Positions 4,977 to 19,684 of a stretch of 64,000 nt of DNA are shown in pieces. The DNA lies in IMG/VR virus record IMGVR_UViG_3300023083_000001, positions 186,001-250,000 of that record; one strand, 5' to 3'. Below the pieces are notes generated by a model. The model saw only the letters and a list, made by a program, of their open reading frames with translations. It was not told the DNA's origin and searched no databases. Positions within the stretch are counted from its first letter, which is position 1. Each line of letters opens with the position of its first letter. The position numbers were made by a program, and so were the translations under genes.

Positions 4977-5013
4977 GCATAGAGGCCGACCACAGGAAAC
5001 CCCATGGTCGGCT
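4977..5013. terminator. Hairpin between convergent genes
   Basis: GCCGACCA...TGGTCGGC preceded by GCATA. Confidence 0.6.
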
Positions 5014-5020
5014 CAAAATG

Positions 5021-5047
5021 TTTACAACCATACATTACACACTTGTA
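5021..5047 (+). promoter_or_regulatory. Putative early promoter, antisense to 5051-5884 and pointing to phuZ
   Basis: TTTACAACCATACATTACACACTTG; first 15 nt identical to the copy at 27820. Confidence 0.55.
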
Positions 5048-5050
5048 CGA

Positions 5051-5884
5051 TCACCACTTAGGCTTACTGCCGAGTGATAACTTCAAGACCTTACGGTACT
5101 TTTCGGTATCGTTAAGTAATGCAATCTTGGTCCAGGTCGTAGAAAGGTAATCGTAGTACAGCTGGTTTGAATCAGCGTACTGGTCGGTGATCTCACGGAT
5201 ACGACCCAGACTCATACCTGCGCGGATTTGACCTTCATCCATGTCTACCACCAGGGTGTTGTGAATATGCGCTTTGGCTGCATAGACGACAAGCTGACTG
5301 AAGTTGTGGTAGTAGGCTGGTTTGATGTCGTTGAAGTTCGGTTCATGAGCCAACGTACAACGCAGGACCGCATCACCGATTATCTGGTTCATGTCGTTGA
5401 CCAGGATCGTGTTAATCCCAACCAATTGAACGTAGGAAGACCCCACCGACTGAACACCTGATGTACTGCGGATAATCTGTCGAGCAATCGACAGCATGTT
5501 GTTGGTATTGGAAGGAGTAATCCCACCACCAGCCCATGATCCCGTTGTGTAGCCGTAGTTGAGTTCGTGAGCGGAGATAATCCGACGACCACCTGTGGCT
5601 TCTCGCGGGAAACGATAGACCATGTTCCAACCATCGACCATCTCAAGCTCAGCCATCATGAGAGGCAGGTACATTTCTGTACCACCAACCAGGTTGACAT
5701 CGACTGCTACACGGCCTTCAATCACGTGTAGTCTGATCTGCTCATCGATTGAGGTGGTGGATACGTTGTCAAAGTAACGATCCCGCCGAGTCGGGTCGTA
5801 ACGTTTGGGCATGAAGGCTTGATCCAGAAGGTCCCTCGGAACTTCAGCTTTAACCCGCATGATTGCAACTTGTACTGGATCCAT
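5051..5884 (-). CDS. Conserved jumbo-phage protein, probably virion structural
   Basis: 277 aa, GGAGGA RBS, divergent from phuZ. Confidence 0.65.
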   Translation of the reverse strand: MDPVQVAIMRVKAEVPRDLLDQAFMPKRYDPTRRDRYFDNVSTTSIDEQIRLHVIEGRVAVDVNLVGGTEMYLPLMMAELEMVDGWNMVYRFPREATGGRRIISAHELNYGYTTGSWAGGGITPSNTNNMLSIARQIIRSTSGVQSVGSSYVQLVGINTILVNDMNQIIGDAVLRCTLAHEPNFNDIKPAYYHNFSQLVVYAAKAHIHNTLVVDMDEGQIRAGMSLGRIREITDQYADSNQLYYDYLSTTWTKIALLNDTEKYRKVLKLSLGSKPKW

Positions 5885-14643: not shown

Positions 14644-14684
14644 CGGCATACAGGGCGGGTTTCCCCGCCCTGGCTTTATGCTGG
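14644..14684. terminator. Bidirectional hairpin between convergent genes
   Basis: GCATA-CAGGGCGGG-TTTC-CCCGCCCTG...TATGC. Confidence 0.7.
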
Positions 14685-15758
14685 AAGTTGACCAATTACC
14701 AGAATATCCAAACGTTCATTCAAGTACACCGCTTCGGCTGTTGTCAAGCCGTTACTCAGTGTCTTGTCTTCCTTAGACTGGATCAGGAAACGCTTGATAG
14801 CCGTGATCTCTTGCAATAGACGATCGTAGCCTGCGCGTTTACCAAACTCCAGTACCACAGACGCCACTTCCATCTTCTGAGCAATCAGCGCCCAGATCAC
14901 TTGGAAGGTCGGAGTCATCGAAGGAAACCCCACCGCTTGCAAGTAATTCTCACCGTAGACCGCTGGGATGCTGGAGAGGATCTGATTAGCCGTCATGGCT
15001 TTACCAGAGATCTTACTCACAGCGTCTGCAACAATCTCATCGGCGTGATGGTTGTTATTGTTTTGCATGAAGGTCAAGTTCGTTCCTACAGGAGATGCGT
15101 ACTTCAGACCCAACGCCACCTGCACCTTATTAAAGATCGCAACGTTCAAGTGACTCTTGAGTGCACCCACCAGAGGAACCGTAGTCAGGTATTCTTCCAT
15201 GAGTTTACCAGGGTTAGCTGACTGCCACATCTTCCACTGAGCTGCCAGCAGAGGGATGTCGATGTGAATGATCGCCAGACCTGGGTTCCTGATCACCATC
15301 TCGTTCTTCACACCCAGCTCAACGATGGTAGTATCACTCAGAGAGTGCTGGATGATTTCGATGGGGGTTACTGACTTCCAGTCACGCCACAGATCCATTG
15401 CAGTCCAGCGAGCACTCCTGGCGTAGACCACGATCTCTGGACACCCTGGATAGAAGTTACTGTCAGTAAAGATTCGACCTTTACTGAAGCTTGAGGTAAT
15501 ATCTAACGAGGAGCAGATATTCTTTGCGTTAACCTCAACCTTGGACATGTAGCTGACAAGGTCGCCGTTGAACTCAACCGTGAGGGAGATCAGCAGCTTC
15601 ATTAATAGGTGAGAACTGTCCAACCGTCCAGTCGATGTGGAACGCTGTTGGATCAGACGCTGGTAGTTCAGATCGACCTGTTCTCTTAGGTAACCCATGC
15701 GGGCATACTGGAACGGCGAACGATCAGTAAAGTTGGAGGGGTTGAATAACTGATACAT
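14676..15758 (-). CDS. Conserved jumbo-phage protein divergent from chmA, probably structural
   Basis: 360 aa; phiKZ gp52/53-like position. Confidence 0.6.
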   Translation of the reverse strand: MYQLFNPSNFTDRSPFQYARMGYLREQVDLNYQRLIQQRSTSTGRLDSSHLLMKLLISLTVEFNGDLVSYMSKVEVNAKNICSSLDITSSFSKGRIFTDSNFYPGCPEIVVYARSARWTAMDLWRDWKSVTPIEIIQHSLSDTTIVELGVKNEMVIRNPGLAIIHIDIPLLAAQWKMWQSANPGKLMEEYLTTVPLVGALKSHLNVAIFNKVQVALGLKYASPVGTNLTFMQNNNNHHADEIVADAVSKISGKAMTANQILSSIPAVYGENYLQAVGFPSMTPTFQVIWALIAQKMEVASVVLEFGKRAGYDRLLQEITAIKRFLIQSKEDKTLSNGLTTAEAVYLNERLDILVIGQLPA

Positions 15759-15916
15759 GTCCGTCCCTATTCGATGGTTATGTATAAAATTACGGAGGTA
15801 CTACTATCTTATGTAATTAAACTTACAGCCTGCCTTCCAGCAGGTTATGCCGTAGTCTATTACCCAATCTGGTTTATTCATGGTATTGGCAGCGTAAAGA
15901 AAGTGGATCTAAAAAA

Positions 15917-15943
15917 TCTACACTAATACATTACCTACTTGAA
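15917..15943 (+). promoter_or_regulatory. Putative early promoter of chmA
   Basis: TCTACACTAATACATTACCTACTTGAA, preceded by an A-tract. Confidence 0.6.
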
Positions 15944-16126
15944 TGAATACACTAGGTTGTTGAAGTTCGCCCGTTTAATACCCGGTGGTACGCCGGGGAG
16001 TCTAGGCCCGAGTGGCTCACGACGGTGGGTTATTCTTTACGGGAATCCCTGATGCGATAGGGGTAACTGTACATCGGACAAATCCGTCCAGCAATCGCGA
16101 ACATATGTTCCATTAAGGAGTGCTTC

Positions 16127-18106
16127 ATGAGCAATAACGACGATTTCCAAACACGTAGCGACAGCCAACCCGAGGGCCGTCAGCCACGCCAGGAATCCCA
16201 AAGCAACGACCGTGCACAAGCCCGCGACGAGCGCCCTCGTCAAAGCCAACGCAATGACGGTGAGCAAGTGACTCTGGCTGACCTCGGTCGTCTGAACGCA
16301 CGTCCTGGTGTCGGTGGTCTGTCTGACGCAGCTCTGGTAGCAATGATCGAAGCTTTCGACGGCGCCAAAGCGTTCGACAAGCCAAACGTTCCTGAAGCAG
16401 TAAGCCGCAAGCGTTTCCGCGTGCTGCCACTGGATCAGAGCACTGGCCGTACGTCACTGTCCAGCCTCCTGGTCGTTCTGCCGACCGAAATCGCTGGCAA
16501 ACTCTTCACCCTGGTTTACGTTCTGCTGATCGAACAGCCGGGCGGCCCAGGTCTGCGTACTCTGTCTGATCGTGGCGAGCAATTCGAAGCCCTGATCCTG
16601 CCAGAAGACGTGATGACCGATCGTTACATCACCGTCATCAAGAGCCAGGTTGCCAACCTGCAAGACAACTCGAACATTCTGATCGTCGGTAGCCAAGTGC
16701 TGTTGTACAGCACCGTAGCCACCATCACCGAGAAAGAAGGTCAAGCTGCAATCGCCGCCGTCTACGACAACGCGCTCGACGCCATCTCCGGCTTCCGCGA
16801 AAACATCGTCGACGCACTGAGCGACAAACGCAACGACGGCATGCGTATCAACCCTGGCATGATTGCCCGGACTGACCGCCTGGAAGTGTCTTTCGATTAC
16901 AGCGGCAAAACCATCTCCGACTCTTCGGGTCTGCCGGTGCGTTCTGACGTGACTTCTGCCCTGTACTACTCGGCAGCAGCCCCTGAAGAAGAAAACCTGT
17001 ACTCCCGTACTCTGCTCGGCGAAGTCCGCGCTGGCCTGGACCTGTTCCTGACCGACGACGGCGTCGATCGTACCATCCCAAGCTTCGGTTCGCGCCGTCG
17101 CCGCGCTGGTGGTCGTGATGAAGTGGATCAGCCATTCTGGCAGCCAGTGTTCAACATCACTTCGATCAACTGCCCTGCTGGCATTCCGTTCTCGCTGGAA
17201 CTGGCTCAGCTGTTGCTGGCCCAGGTAGCACTGCAATCCAACGACTATCGTTGGGCGAACGTGCTGCGTCCTCGTTCCACCATCGCCGGTGGTCTGAAGC
17301 CAGTCGCACAACTGTCGCACCTGCACCTGCTGAACCCGGACAAGGAAAAGGCCGCCGTCATCAACGACGTCAGCCAGAACATGTCCGATCCCGATCTGTA
17401 CGACTTCCTCGACGTCACTGTCAAACCGGAAATCGTATTCGGCATGGCGATCCCTTCCAGCGGCGAGAAATCTTGGGTGCTCAGCATCTACGAGCGTATC
17501 GCACTGGCAGATCCGCGTGACGCCGAGAAACTGATCGACACCTTGTTCGCATCGGCCGACGTTCTGACCGGTGGTCGTTTCACGAAACTGTACGACGAAC
17601 TCTCCAACGGCACCAACCCGTCGCCGGTTGCGGCATACGGCACTCGCGCCTTCACCGGCACCTGGACCGATACCGACGGCAACGTGCGTCCTCTGAGCGA
17701 ATGGAACGTTCCGGCGGTCCTGACTTCGGTTGGCGTGAAGAACCCAGAGCTGGCTCAAGACTACCAGTACACCTTCGAAGACCGTCGTCACTCGGTCGAC
17801 TACAGCTTGGCACAACGCAACGGCATCCTGTCGCGCATTGTTCCAGGTCTGCACATCGTCGGTACCTGTGAGCAACTGAGCTTCCACCCTTGGTACATCC
17901 AAGCGTTGTCTCTGGCCCTGGCTGATGCGAACATGGCATCGCTGCCAACCAGCGGTGATGGCCTGCAACAGTCGCGTCGTGTGGGTAGCACCGACTTCTC
18001 GGCGTTCGCTACTGCGGATATCGGCTCTTCGCGCCGTCGTCCAAACGACACTGCTGATCGTGGCCGTGGTCGCGATCGCTTCAATGGCGGTGGCAACTAC
18101 TACTGA
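16127..18106 (+). CDS. chmA: Chimallin, major phage nuclear shell protein
   Basis: 659 aa, TAAGGAG RBS, strong codon bias, disordered tails, GLPVRSD motif, directly upstream of the nvRNAP beta' gene as in phiKZ gp54-gp55. Confidence 0.88.
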   Translation: MSNNDDFQTRSDSQPEGRQPRQESQSNDRAQARDERPRQSQRNDGEQVTLADLGRLNARPGVGGLSDAALVAMIEAFDGAKAFDKPNVPEAVSRKRFRVLPLDQSTGRTSLSSLLVVLPTEIAGKLFTLVYVLLIEQPGGPGLRTLSDRGEQFEALILPEDVMTDRYITVIKSQVANLQDNSNILIVGSQVLLYSTVATITEKEGQAAIAAVYDNALDAISGFRENIVDALSDKRNDGMRINPGMIARTDRLEVSFDYSGKTISDSSGLPVRSDVTSALYYSAAAPEEENLYSRTLLGEVRAGLDLFLTDDGVDRTIPSFGSRRRRAGGRDEVDQPFWQPVFNITSINCPAGIPFSLELAQLLLAQVALQSNDYRWANVLRPRSTIAGGLKPVAQLSHLHLLNPDKEKAAVINDVSQNMSDPDLYDFLDVTVKPEIVFGMAIPSSGEKSWVLSIYERIALADPRDAEKLIDTLFASADVLTGGRFTKLYDELSNGTNPSPVAAYGTRAFTGTWTDTDGNVRPLSEWNVPAVLTSVGVKNPELAQDYQYTFEDRRHSVDYSLAQRNGILSRIVPGLHIVGTCEQLSFHPWYIQALSLALADANMASLPTSGDGLQQSRRVGSTDFSAFATADIGSSRRRPNDTADRGRGRDRFNGGGNYY

Positions 18107-18134
18107 GTCTGGTAGTAGTCGTTAGGGTATAGAT

Positions 18135-18172
18135 CAGGAGAGGGGTAATTCCCTCTCCTGCTTCTTTTTTTT
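18135..18172 (+). terminator. Intrinsic terminator after chmA
   Basis: CAGGAGAGGG...CCCTCTCCTG plus T-run. Confidence 0.85.
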
Positions 18173-18193
18173 CTTATCCCTAGGAGATCGTGT

Positions 18194-19684
18194 ATGGAAT
18201 TGATTACTCAGGATATCCATGAACCTCGGCAACGGTATCCTGGTCGAAAAGGTATTTACCCCATCATCGAGAACTTCGATGACATCTTTCGTCGTCTAGA
18301 TATCCAGCCCGTGTTGGCTAATGACCTGGATCTGACAACAGATGCCGGTAAAGAACGATTCAATGATCTGGTCTATACGAAGTACGATGGTGACGTGTTC
18401 TCTAACGTTCCCGCTTGTCCATGTCGTTACACCAAAGGTGGTAGCAAGATCCGTCACAAGTGTGTCCGTTGTGGGCACTTAGTTCTACCGATTACCGAAC
18501 AGTCCATCGAACCCATTGTCTGGGTGCGTGTGCCTGACGAACTCCCTGCTTTCATGAACCTGACTGTGTACCGACTACTGCGTGCTCGTTTCACCAAGAG
18601 CGGCTTCAGCGTAATCGACTACATGCTCGACCCGAAATACCGTCCTCCGAAACTGGAAAGTATCGAGGAAAATCTGACCAAAGCAATATGCCCTGTGCGT
18701 GGGATTGTTTATTTCCACAAACACTTCGACAAGATCATCACTGCTCTGTGTGACCTCCGGCACTTTCAGTCGGCGACTCGCGGTGCTGTGACGCTCAAGT
18801 TCGTAGAAGCTCACCGAAAGCTCATATTCTGTAAGTACATTCCGTTCCCTTCCAAGATCGGTTTCATTGTAGAAGATGTCGGCGATCGTAAGTACGTTGA
18901 CCCGAAGATGGCGCCTGCTCTTAATGCGCTGATCTCTCTGGCTAACGTCACCAACGGCGGCCGTTCAGCAGTACGTGACATGGAGAGCCGTGTAGCCCGT
19001 GCCATTGGCAGTCTGGCGAACTACTACTCCAGCAACGAACACAGCAAGATCTTCGATAAGAAAGGTATCTTGCGCAAACTGGTGTATGGGGTAAGTCCAC
19101 ACTTTACCTTCCGTACGGTTATCACCAGTAACCATAAACCTCACGACCATGAATCTCTCGAGACTCCATGGGGTGCAACAGTCCTGACGCTCAAGTTGCA
19201 TTTGGCGAACAAGCTGTTGGCAGAACGTTATACGCCGAATGAAATCCTGACGCTGATCTACGATAACACTCTGCGTACGCACTACAAGCTGGAAGAGCTG
19301 ATCGATATACTGATCGCGGAAAGTCCGGGTGGACGTGGTATTCCGTGTGGCTTTACCCGATTCCCATCGCTGAAACGCGGTTCTACCCAACGGTTCTTCA
19401 TCAACCGGGTGAAACGTGATCCTACAGCGCTGAGTACATCGATTTCGGTATTGACGCTTATTGCGCCGAACGCTGACTTTGATGGCGATTACATGACTGG
19501 ACAACTCTGCCTGGATAACCAGACAGCCAGAGCGTTTGACCGGATGGCGCCGTACACTGGGATCATGGATCTCAAACGCCCATTCCGTGTGGGTAATCAT
19601 GCGTCCATCCCAGCGCCTGTTCTATCGACAATCAATGCCCGTCTAGAAGAGGGTGATGACCTGTCAGTACCTGTGGAGGATTGA
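18194..19684 (+). CDS. rpoC: Non-virion RNA polymerase beta' N-terminal subunit (phiKZ gp55-like)
   Basis: Catalytic NADFDGD; zinc site CPC...CVRC; RFPSL motif. Confidence 0.93.
   Translation: MELITQDIHEPRQRYPGRKGIYPIIENFDDIFRRLDIQPVLANDLDLTTDAGKERFNDLVYTKYDGDVFSNVPACPCRYTKGGSKIRHKCVRCGHLVLPITEQSIEPIVWVRVPDELPAFMNLTVYRLLRARFTKSGFSVIDYMLDPKYRPPKLESIEENLTKAICPVRGIVYFHKHFDKIITALCDLRHFQSATRGAVTLKFVEAHRKLIFCKYIPFPSKIGFIVEDVGDRKYVDPKMAPALNALISLANVTNGGRSAVRDMESRVARAIGSLANYYSSNEHSKIFDKKGILRKLVYGVSPHFTFRTVITSNHKPHDHESLETPWGATVLTLKLHLANKLLAERYTPNEILTLIYDNTLRTHYKLEELIDILIAESPGGRGIPCGFTRFPSLKRGSTQRFFINRVKRDPTALSTSISVLTLIAPNADFDGDYMTGQLCLDNQTARAFDRMAPYTGIMDLKRPFRVGNHASIPAPVLSTINARLEEGDDLSVPVED

What the first reader, a model, noticed from the sequence alone, without database searches (positions are those of the whole stretch)
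15944..16126. Long structured 5' leader of chimallin mRNA
Seen: ~185 nt separate the promoter motif from the chmA ATG, compared with ~25-30 nt for the motifs at 233, 27820 and 32759. The leader is GC-rich and can form a multibranch fold: closing GTTCGC(15965)/GCGAAC(16097), CCGT/ACGG (15971/16039), and hairpins CCCGG-N7-CCGGG (15981), CCCT-N8-AGGG (16047) and GGAC-N6-GTCC (16076). The RBS lies just outside the fold. Inference: a cis-regulatory RNA for stability, export, autoregulation or ChmC binding on the shell-protein mRNA.
Basis: partly seen in the sequence, partly recalled or inferred. Interest (0 to 1): 0.6.

Follow-up and report, generated by a model that had tools for sequence, protein, structure and literature searches.

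The report
Pseudoknotted RNA leader of chimallin gene
The gene for the shell protein of the "phage nucleus" in this uncultivated soil jumbo phage is preceded by a roughly 185-base leader holding a conserved, knotted RNA fold of about 120 bases that matches no catalogued RNA family and probably tunes how much shell protein is made.

Summary
A PhiKZ-type early-promoter motif (15909-15944) lies 193 nt before the chmA ATG (16127); most other copies of the motif lie 35-56 nt from their genes.

The fold needs correcting. A second pseudoknot, PK2 (GCGAU with AUCGC), is probable.

Over the structure, 92% of cells pair, against 33-44% in slid controls, and 19 of 31 pairs show double-sided changes.

The domain is non-coding, occurs once per genome, always sits before chmA, and has no Rfam match. 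PhiKZ, pPa_SNUABM_DT01 and one 39%-identical relative lack it.

It is a new structured-RNA family in the chmA 5' leader. Function is inferred only. Most likely it is a cis-acting operator beside the ribosome-binding site, bound by a protein. Riboswitch, stabiliser and trans-acting RNA readings remain open. No terminator or Shine-Dalgarno-masking platform was found, and no transcript data could be obtained.

The parts
15909..15944 (+). Early (virion-RNAP type) promoter-like motif: A-run, TACA, TACATTAC (15927-34), N4, TTGAAT (15939-44). Inferred TSS about 15941-15946.
   Evidence: About 12 copies in the genome, all on the + strand before ORFs. The core is invariant in relatives. PhiKZ has TATATTAC-N4-TTGAAT before its own chimallin gene. 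Jumbo-phage early motifs are centred near -10 (PMC7598289).
15969..15974 (+). Conserved (A/G)CCC(G/A) box 5-11 nt upstream of P1; no pairing partner found.
   Evidence: Conserved in most leaders. It does not covary with the P2 3' strand (my reading).
15981..15997 (+). P1 hairpin: CCCGG / CCGGG, loop UGGUACG carrying the PK1 5' strand GUAC (15988-91).
   Evidence: 4 of 5 pairs show double-sided changes; 93% of cells pair.
16007..16043 (+). P2 (CCCG 16007-10 / CGGG 16040-43) enclosing P3 (GCUCAC 16015-20 / GUGGGU 16025-30) with its loop GACG 16021-24. CGACGGU is invariant in 24 of the 26 leaders.
   Evidence: P2: 3 of 4 pairs covary (CG, UA, GC, AU types). P3: 3 of 6 covary, with many G-U pairs. 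RNAalifold predicts both independently on the MAFFT alignment.
16047..16063 (+). P4 hairpin: CCCU / GGGG, loop GAUGCGAUA carrying the PK2 5' strand GCGAU (16054-58).
   Evidence: All 5 pairs of the helix show double-sided changes.
16069..16072 (+). PK1 3' strand GUAC, pairing with the P1 loop 15988-91.
   Evidence: U-A changes to C-G in L002, L003 and L037. The helix extends to 5-7 bp in L004, L005 and L018. RNAalifold chose it unprompted.
16076..16089 (+). P5, an optional hairpin GGAC / GUCC.
   Evidence: Present in about 19 of 26 leaders, with different stems (UGGGA/UCCCA, GCC/GGC, UGCC/GGCA); absent in 7.
16094..16099 (+). PK2 3' strand AUCGC(G), pairing with the P4 loop 16053-58 (probable).
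   Evidence: The GCG/CGC core is invariant in 26 of 26. A-U changes to U-A in L004 (GCGU/ACGC). The flanking pair varies (U-G, U-A, A-U).
16099..16110 (+). P6, the perfect palindrome GAACATATGTTC between the RNA domain and the SD.
   Evidence: A palindrome of at least 10 nt is present in 25 of 26 leaders, against 2.3% of shuffles, in at least 7 different sequences. A palindrome also sits here in PhiKZ and L097.
16115..16129 (+). SD AAGGAG (16115-20) and the chmA start codon (16127-29), outside the conserved fold.
   Evidence: No conserved anti-SD was found (my reading).
16127..18106 (+). chmA, the chimallin / nuclear shell protein, 659 aa.
   Evidence: Pfam PF25677, E 3e-13. phrog_4795 'nuclear shell protein', E 2e-41.
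18135..18177 (+). Conserved intrinsic terminator after chmA: an 11-bp GC-rich stem followed by a U-run.

Best explanation
The early chmA transcript of this jumbo phage starts at a PhiKZ-type virion-RNAP promoter and carries a leader of about 185 nt. Nucleotides 15978-16100 of that leader fold into a compact domain: hairpin P1, a P2/P3 arm, hairpin P4 and an optional P5. The domain is locked by a pseudoknot between the P1 loop and the segment just after P4 (PK1), and probably by a second one between the P4 loop and a segment about 35 nt further on (PK2). It ends at a palindromic hairpin 5 nt before a strong, unmasked SD.

Shown: the RNA structure is real, is read on the + strand, is under selection, and is tied specifically to chmA.

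Inferred: it acts in cis on the shell-protein mRNA. My preferred mechanism is a recognition platform (operator) for a trans-acting protein. That protein would be a phage early protein, possibly ChmA itself or a partner. Docked next to the ribosome-binding site, it would set translation initiation or mRNA lifetime and so keep ChmA output in step with shell assembly. This parallels the gene 32 leader pseudoknot of T4 and the rpsO leader of E. coli.

My probabilities are about 0.9 that it is a functional structured RNA, about 0.6 that it acts in cis on chmA expression, and about 0.3 that the effector is a protein acting as a feedback operator.
For: The gene order (family-B DNA polymerase, a 360-aa gene on the minus strand, a 340-480 nt intergenic region, chmA, the non-virion RNA polymerase (nvRNAP) beta gene) is kept in all relatives fetched with enough upstream sequence to judge, except L097.

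CM R1 hits every motif-bearing leader at 44-108 bits.

Covariation is strong. On the MAFFT alignment A5, 91.9% of cells pair against 33-43% in slid controls, and 15 pairs show double-sided changes. On the CM alignment A7, 19 of 31 pairs and 108 cells show double-sided changes, against 4-32 cells in slid controls and 0 of 500 shuffles. RNAalifold recovers P2, P3, P4 and PK1 on its own.

Many G-U pairs fix the + strand as the RNA strand.

All six frames of the window's core carry stops, and no frame stays open across relatives.

The domain is single-copy in the window's own genome and in 5 other near-complete genomes, always before chmA. A pattern scan of IMG/VR followed by the CM found it only at chmA loci.

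The core is more conserved than the CDS: 91% against 74% nucleotide identity for L001, and 76% against 61% for L012.

The promoter motif is homologous to the one before PhiKZ gp054.

The domain abuts the RBS, and the leader contains no terminator.
Against: The TSS and the presence of the leader on mature mRNA are therefore inferred.

PhiKZ gp054 has both an early and a middle TSS (PMC8244752). A second promoter close to the ATG could make most chmA mRNA leader-less late in infection.

The SD is not sequestered by any conserved pairing, so the regulatory output is not visible in the sequence.

No binding partner is identified. The ChmA N-terminal tail is of mixed charge (R/D/E) rather than an arginine-rich RNA-binding motif, and it is similar in phages that lack the RNA.

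PhiKZ, pPa_SNUABM_DT01 and L097 lack the domain, and L016 has lost the P2/P3 arm. It is therefore a clade-specific refinement, not a general requirement of chimallin expression.
Confidence: 0.5

Rival explanations
1. Riboswitch: the pseudoknotted domain is an aptamer for a small molecule or ion and gates chmA translation or mRNA fate according to host physiology.
For: The size (about 120 nt), the multi-helix pseudoknotted architecture, the invariant unpaired nucleotides (CGACGGU, GGAA, GCGAUA) and the 5'-UTR position are typical of aptamers.
Against: There is no Rfam hit even at E<=10. No terminator or SD-sequestering expression platform was found (my reading). The motif is tied to a single structural gene in one phage clade and was found nowhere else, unlike riboswitches, which recur before genes related to their ligand. 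The invariant P3 loop changes in L025/L023, and the whole P2/P3 arm is dispensable in L016.
Confidence: 0.15
2. Passive stabiliser or processing element: the compact knot shields the abundant early mRNA from host RNases, or defines a processed 5' end (possibly by self-cleavage), with no regulatory ligand.
For: ChmA must be made early and in large amounts. Double-pseudoknot folds are mechanically robust. The SD is left free, as expected for an enhancer or protector.
Against: The fold begins about 35 nt downstream of the inferred TSS, whereas 5' stabilisers normally sit at the very end. No ribozyme family matched, and the topology differs from HDV, pistol and hatchet ribozymes. Such strict conservation of loop sequences is more than protection needs.
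Confidence: 0.15
3. Trans-acting or decoy RNA: the leader is released or accumulates as a small RNA (as proposed for 17 5'UTR-derived RNAs of PhiKZ) and acts on a host or phage factor.
For: PhiKZ produces abundant short 5'-UTR RNAs (PMC10914365). PhiPA3 eCLIP shows small-RNA-like peaks near chmA (PMC11077065).
Against: There is no terminator or obvious processing site between the domain and chmA. The position next to the RBS is strictly conserved.
Confidence: 0.1
4. Polymerase-modifying leader (put-like): the nascent RNA binds the phage RNAP and promotes read-through of the conserved terminator after chmA into the nvRNAP beta gene.
For: A strong conserved terminator at 18135-18177 is followed by the nvRNAP beta gene, which has no promoter motif of its own.
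Against: PhiKZ has the same gene order without this RNA. Partial read-through needs no special RNA. There is no precedent for such an element with jumbo-phage RNAPs.
Confidence: 0.07
5. The first reader's multibranch fold is the functional structure: closing stem GUUCGC/GCGAAC, CCGU/ACGG and three hairpins.
For: The complementary segments exist in the window. The MFE fold uses part of them.
Against: The closing stem is at chance level and is not conserved. It also competes with PK2 and P6. CCGU/ACGG does not covary, whereas 16007-10/16040-43 does.
Confidence: 0.03

Closest known systems
T4 gene 32 mRNA leader pseudoknot (autogenous translational operator)
   Same: It is a phage 5'-leader pseudoknot placed upstream of the RBS of a highly expressed, self-assembling protein. 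The RBS itself is not masked by the fold.
   Different: The T4 element is one small H-type pseudoknot followed by an unstructured A/U-rich tract that gp32 coats. Here there are four or five helices, one or two pseudoknots and then a palindromic hairpin. ChmA is not known to bind RNA. This comparison rests on my own knowledge and was not tested here.
Bacterial ribosomal-protein leaders (e.g. the E. coli rpsO/S15 pseudoknot)
   Same: Each is a structured RNA family tied to one operon, next to the RBS, and lineage-restricted. The regulator is a protein.
   Different: Those leaders mimic rRNA sites and regulate ribosomal genes. No mimicry or partner is known here.
Riboswitch aptamers with loop-to-3' pseudoknots (preQ1-III, c-di-GMP-II and ZTP types)
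   Same: Size, pseudoknotted compaction, invariant junction and loop nucleotides, and 5'-UTR location are shared.
   Different: No Rfam family matches. No expression platform was found. The gene association is with a structural protein.
5'UTR-derived ncRNA candidates of PhiKZ (ONT-cappable-seq, PMC10914365)
   Same: These are structured RNAs in 5' leaders of genes of nucleus-forming jumbo phages.
   Different: They are defined by premature termination. None is reported for gp054. The PhiKZ chmA leader is about 60-70 nt and lacks this domain.
HK022 put RNA
   Same: It is a cis-acting, two-hairpin leader RNA of a phage early transcript.
   Different: It acts on host RNAP to suppress termination. 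There is no sequence or topological similarity here. This comparison rests on my own knowledge and was not tested here.

Membership tests
Any Rfam 15 family (riboswitches, ribozymes, leaders, sRNAs) | Covariance-model match | tested here: not met
   There were no hits at E<=10 in 15500-16500 and none at gathering score in the whole window.
Riboswitch | Conserved, covarying aptamer-like fold in a 5' UTR | tested here: met
Riboswitch | Expression platform (intrinsic terminator or SD/start sequestration alternative to the aptamer) | tested here: not met
   There is no terminator-like site in 15944-16126. No conserved anti-SD was found in the 26 leaders.
Riboswitch | Direct binding of a small ligand | not testable with these tools
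   This needs in-line probing or ITC.
Autogenous translational operator (T4 gene 32 or r-protein leader type) | Structured element adjacent to the RBS of the regulated gene, specific to that gene | tested here: met
   The domain ends 16 nt before the SD. It is single-copy and always before chmA.
Autogenous translational operator (T4 gene 32 or r-protein leader type) | The encoded (or an operon) protein binds the leader and represses translation | not testable with these tools
   The only indirect look found the ChmA N-tail not arginine-rich in net charge and similar in phages that lack the RNA.
Transcription attenuator | Terminator hairpin plus U-run inside the leader | tested here: not met
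Self-cleaving ribozymes (HDV-like, hammerhead, twister, pistol, hatchet) | Family-specific core and topology | tested here: not met
   There was no CM hit. The helix order P1-(P2(P3))-P4 with two loop-to-downstream pseudoknots differs from the nested HDV topology (my comparison, from knowledge).
PhiKZ-type early (virion RNAP) promoter | Conserved AT-rich motif near -10, recurring before early operons on one strand | tested here: met
   TACATTAC-N4-TTGAAT here compares with TATATTAC-N4-TTGAAT before PhiKZ gp054. About 12 copies occur, all on the + strand. The consensus description is in PMC7598289.
PhiKZ-type early (virion RNAP) promoter | Mapped transcription start | not testable with these tools

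The most novel reading that the evidence does not exclude
The domain is a true sensor RNA: a new riboswitch class, or a receptor for a phage or host signalling molecule such as a nucleotide second messenger. It would gate synthesis of the nuclear-shell protein and so let the phage couple construction of its nucleus to the state of the host cell. Nothing found here excludes this. The invariant loops and junctions and the knotted core are aptamer-like.
Probability: 0.12. Interest if true: 0.9.

Novelty: new variant of a known kind. Interest (0 to 1): 0.62.

Why it matters
Chimallin is the defining protein of nucleus-forming jumbo phages, and it must be made first, fast and in the right amount. 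How its expression is controlled after transcription is essentially unstudied. I found no paper describing a chmA leader element.

A conserved, pseudoknotted, gene-specific RNA directly before its ribosome-binding site points to a dedicated post-transcriptional control step in one large clade of soil jumbo phages.

It also gives a compact RNA of about 120 nt that can be tested in vitro even though the phages are uncultivated. And it adds a well-supported new family to the catalogue of phage structured RNAs.

Tried and rejected
- Known RNA family: Rfam gave nothing at E<=10 locally or at gathering score window-wide. There are no tRNAs in the window.
- Close relatives in the phage database: DNA search found none. 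tblastn gave at best 23.6% identity. A single-protein scan of IMG/VR found none. Relatives came from the word search and the alignment-based scans.
- Thermodynamics alone: z-scores of -1.86 and -1.42 are not significant, and the MFE fold differs from the conserved one.
- Closing stem and any 5'-3' enclosing helix: chance level, not conserved.
- Alternative pairing of the upstream CCCG box with the P2 3' strand: it does not covary. L004 and L014 change P2 to CCUG/CAGG while the box stays.
- SD sequestration: no conserved anti-SD was found.
- Small ORF or minus-strand gene: the window's core has stops in all six frames, and no frame stays open across relatives.
- Extra copies or other gene contexts: none in 6 genomes. 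The IMG/VR pattern scan gave 11 true hits, all at known chmA loci, and 33 chance hits. A strict pattern in 185,579 prokaryote genomes gave 3 chance hits.
- Presence in other chimalliviruses: PhiKZ, pPa_SNUABM_DT01 and L097 lack it.
- Arginine-rich ChmA N-tail as RNA binder: no support.
- PhiKZ TSS table: no supplement is held. The Ceyssens 2014 paper is not held.

Full report
CONTEXT. The window is bases 186001-250000 of a 258,357-bp contig with direct terminal repeats, rated complete. It is the JGI metagenome contig Ga0247734_1000011, so the phage is uncultivated.

The ORF at 16127-18106 (+, 659 aa) is a chimallin: Pfam PF25677 at E 3e-13 and phrog_4795 'nuclear shell protein' at E 2e-41. Its upstream neighbour, 14676-15758 on the minus strand, is a virion structural protein (phrog_3938/14481). 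Its downstream neighbour, 18194-19684, is the non-virion RNA polymerase (nvRNAP) beta subunit (phrog_2987, E 7e-128). This is the gene order seen around PhiKZ gp052-gp055. The divergent intergenic region 15759-16126 is 368 nt long.

THE OBSERVATION.

The 'promoter motif' is real and recurrent. About a dozen sites share an A-run, then TACA, N5, TACAT(T/C)A(C), N4-5 and TG(A). All are on the + strand before ORFs. The copy before chmA reads TACATTAC-N4-TTGAAT. PhiKZ has TATATTAC-N4-TTGAAT before its own chimallin gene. Jumbo-phage early promoters are described as conserved AT-rich motifs of about 10 nt centred near -10 (PMC7598289). I therefore place the TSS at about 15941-15946.

A few other copies (89-200 nt) are also long. 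The leader as a whole is not GC-rich (51%, as is the genome), but its core is 57% against 37% for the upstream half of the spacer. Single-sequence folding is not significantly better than shuffles (z -1.86 and -1.42), so the window's sequence alone could not settle the matter.

RELATIVES. The phage collection holds nothing close. The word search found 34 chimallins at 39-71% identity, all metagenomic. I fetched their loci, plus loci from JGI metagenomes and IMG/VR. All loci fetched with enough upstream sequence to judge, except L097, keep the order family-B DNA polymerase, minus-strand 360-aa gene, a 340-480 nt spacer, chmA, nvRNAP beta gene. They gave 26 distinct leader sequences.

THE STRUCTURE. 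Reading the leaders side by side gives the following consensus, in window coordinates.

- P1 is 15981-85 with 15993-97. Its loop contains GUAC.
- P2 is 16007-10 with 16040-43.
- P3 lies inside P2, 16015-20 with 16025-30. Its loop is GACG, and CGACGGU is invariant in 24 of the 26 leaders.
- A GGAA junction follows.
- P4 is 16047-50 with 16060-63. Its loop is GAUGCGAUA.
- PK1 pairs the P1-loop GUAC (15988-91) with GUAC at 16069-72.
- P5 is an optional hairpin, 16076-79 with 16086-89.
- PK2 pairs the P4-loop GCGAU (16054-58) with AUCGC at 16094-98.

On the plain MAFFT alignment A5, 91.9% of cells pair, against 33-43% when the 3' partners are slid by 1-3 columns. Fifteen pairs carry double-sided changes, against 3-8 in the slid controls.

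On the CM-fitted alignment A7 (which leans toward the model), 19 of 31 pairs and 108 cells carry double-sided changes, against 4-32 cells slid, and no shuffle in 500 reaches the observed values. P1, P2, P3 and P4 have 4, 3, 3 and 5 such pairs respectively.

PK1 changes from U-A to C-G in L002 and L003 and, separately, in L037. It lengthens to 5-7 bp in L004, L005 and L018. In the distant L023/L025 it appears to be replaced by a different complementary pair, UGAUG/CAUUA. RNAalifold, run on the unfitted alignment, predicted P2, P3, P4 and the long-range PK1 by itself.

PK2 is mostly invariant. Its support is the invariance of both strands, one A-U to U-A swap in L004, and variable flanking pairs. 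I call it probable.

The many G-U pairs would be A-C mismatches on the other strand, so the RNA is read on the + strand.

It would also compete with PK2 and P6.

SPECIFICITY. Model R1 scores every motif-bearing leader at 44-108 bits. It finds one copy in the window's own genome and one in each of five other near-complete genomes, always before chmA.

A pattern scan of IMG/VR followed by the model gave 11 true hits, all at contigs already known as chmA loci, and 33 chance matches. A strict pattern over one genome per prokaryote species gave three chance matches only.

The core has stops in all six frames in the window, and no frame stays open across relatives. It is more conserved than the coding sequence among the closer relatives, for example 91% against 74% nucleotide identity for L001. 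Rfam has no match.

The family has limits. PhiKZ, pPa_SNUABM_DT01 and L097 (a 39%-identical chimallin) lack it. The PhiKZ and pPa_SNUABM_DT01 leaders run about 60-75 nt from the early-promoter motif to the ATG. L016 keeps P1, P4 and a 9-bp PK1 analogue but has lost the P2/P3 arm. It also carries a degenerate full-length copy upstream of the promoter motif.

WHAT SURROUNDS THE DOMAIN. Between PK2 and the SD, 25 of 26 leaders have a perfect palindrome of 10-14 nt, against 2.3% of shuffled controls. It occurs in at least seven different sequences, and all contain TGT/ACA half-sites. PhiKZ and L097 have a palindrome in the same place.

The centre of the palindrome is always self-complementary, which is more than an RNA hairpin needs. 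A DNA operator, an element of a second (middle) promoter, or an RNA duplex are all possible. This matters because PhiKZ gp054 has an early primary TSS and a middle secondary TSS (PMC8244752). A second start near the palindrome would make the structured leader specific to early transcripts.

The SD (AAGGAG) is strong, and no conserved pairing masks it. There is no terminator-like site in the leader. A conserved 11-bp terminator follows chmA at 18135-18177.

MECHANISM. Shown: the leader holds a selected, + strand, pseudoknotted RNA domain bound to chmA. Everything beyond that is inference.

Three features resemble protein-recognised leaders, such as T4 gene 32 and r-protein operons, more than riboswitches: the domain sits next to an exposed RBS, it is restricted to one gene, and it has no expression platform. 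My preferred model is therefore a cis-acting operator for a trans-acting protein that sets ChmA translation or mRNA life (about 0.3 for this specific model, about 0.6 for cis control in general).

The other readings remain open: riboswitch (0.15), a passive stabiliser or processing element (0.15), a released small RNA (0.10), and a put-like read-through element for the terminator after chmA (0.07).

ChmC binding is not specifically supported. ChmC eCLIP shows binding near start codons without a motif (PMC11077065). ChmA's N-tail is of mixed charge and is similar in phages that lack the RNA.

NOVELTY. I found no report of a chmA leader element. PhiKZ 5'-UTR RNAs are known, but not at gp054 (PMC10914365). 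This is a new structured-RNA family of a familiar general kind, a cis-regulatory 5' leader.

LIMITS. The phages are uncultivated. E-values from the short-calibrated model are rough. The sequences are related, so cell counts overstate the number of independent events, although the slid controls, which keep relatedness, are far lower.

Noticed in passing
window 16099-16110; L048 about 5609-5622 (PhiKZ); L097 about 1451-1470: A perfect palindrome of 10-20 nt sits just upstream of the chmA SD in 25 of 26 motif-bearing leaders. It also occurs in PhiKZ (TTCTTGATCAAGAA) and L097 (TGGTTAGCGGCCGCTAACCA), which lack the RNA domain. The sequences differ, but the centre is always self-complementary. It may be a DNA operator, a middle-promoter element or an RNA hairpin/duplex.
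   Followed up: partly
window 18135-18177 (and 18096-18125): A conserved, covarying intrinsic terminator (11-bp stem plus U-run) lies directly after chmA. It is preceded by a hairpin ACUACUAC/GUAGUAGU that spans the stop codon. The nvRNAP beta gene follows about 17 nt later with no promoter motif, so it probably depends on read-through.
   Followed up: partly
window 15780-15905: The upstream, AT-rich half of the intergenic region is also conserved across relatives. It holds a GTAAAAAGTTAC-like box near 15783-15795 and a hairpin CCTGC...GCAGG at about 15831-15847. These are probably signals for the divergent virion-protein gene 14676-15758 (-).
   Followed up: no
window about 5001-5037 (+), facing the ORF at 5051-5884 (-): A full-scoring early-promoter motif points into an oppositely oriented 277-aa ORF, with no + strand ORF for about 580 nt. 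It may drive an antisense or non-coding early transcript.
   Followed up: no
L016 1018-1140 and 1240-1348: One relative (Ga0180219_1000731) has a reduced leader without the P2/P3 arm but with a 9-bp PK1 analogue. It also has a degenerate full-length copy of the domain upstream of the promoter motif. This looks like a duplication followed by reduction.
   Followed up: partly
genome C1 about 6308 and about 146351 (outside the window): Two further early-promoter motifs lie 180-200 nt from the next plausible ORF start. They may mark other long leaders or unannotated small genes.
   Followed up: no
L012 6457-7479: In one relative an HNH/NUMOD1 homing-endonuclease-like gene follows a shortened (443 aa) nvRNAP beta gene.
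   Followed up: no
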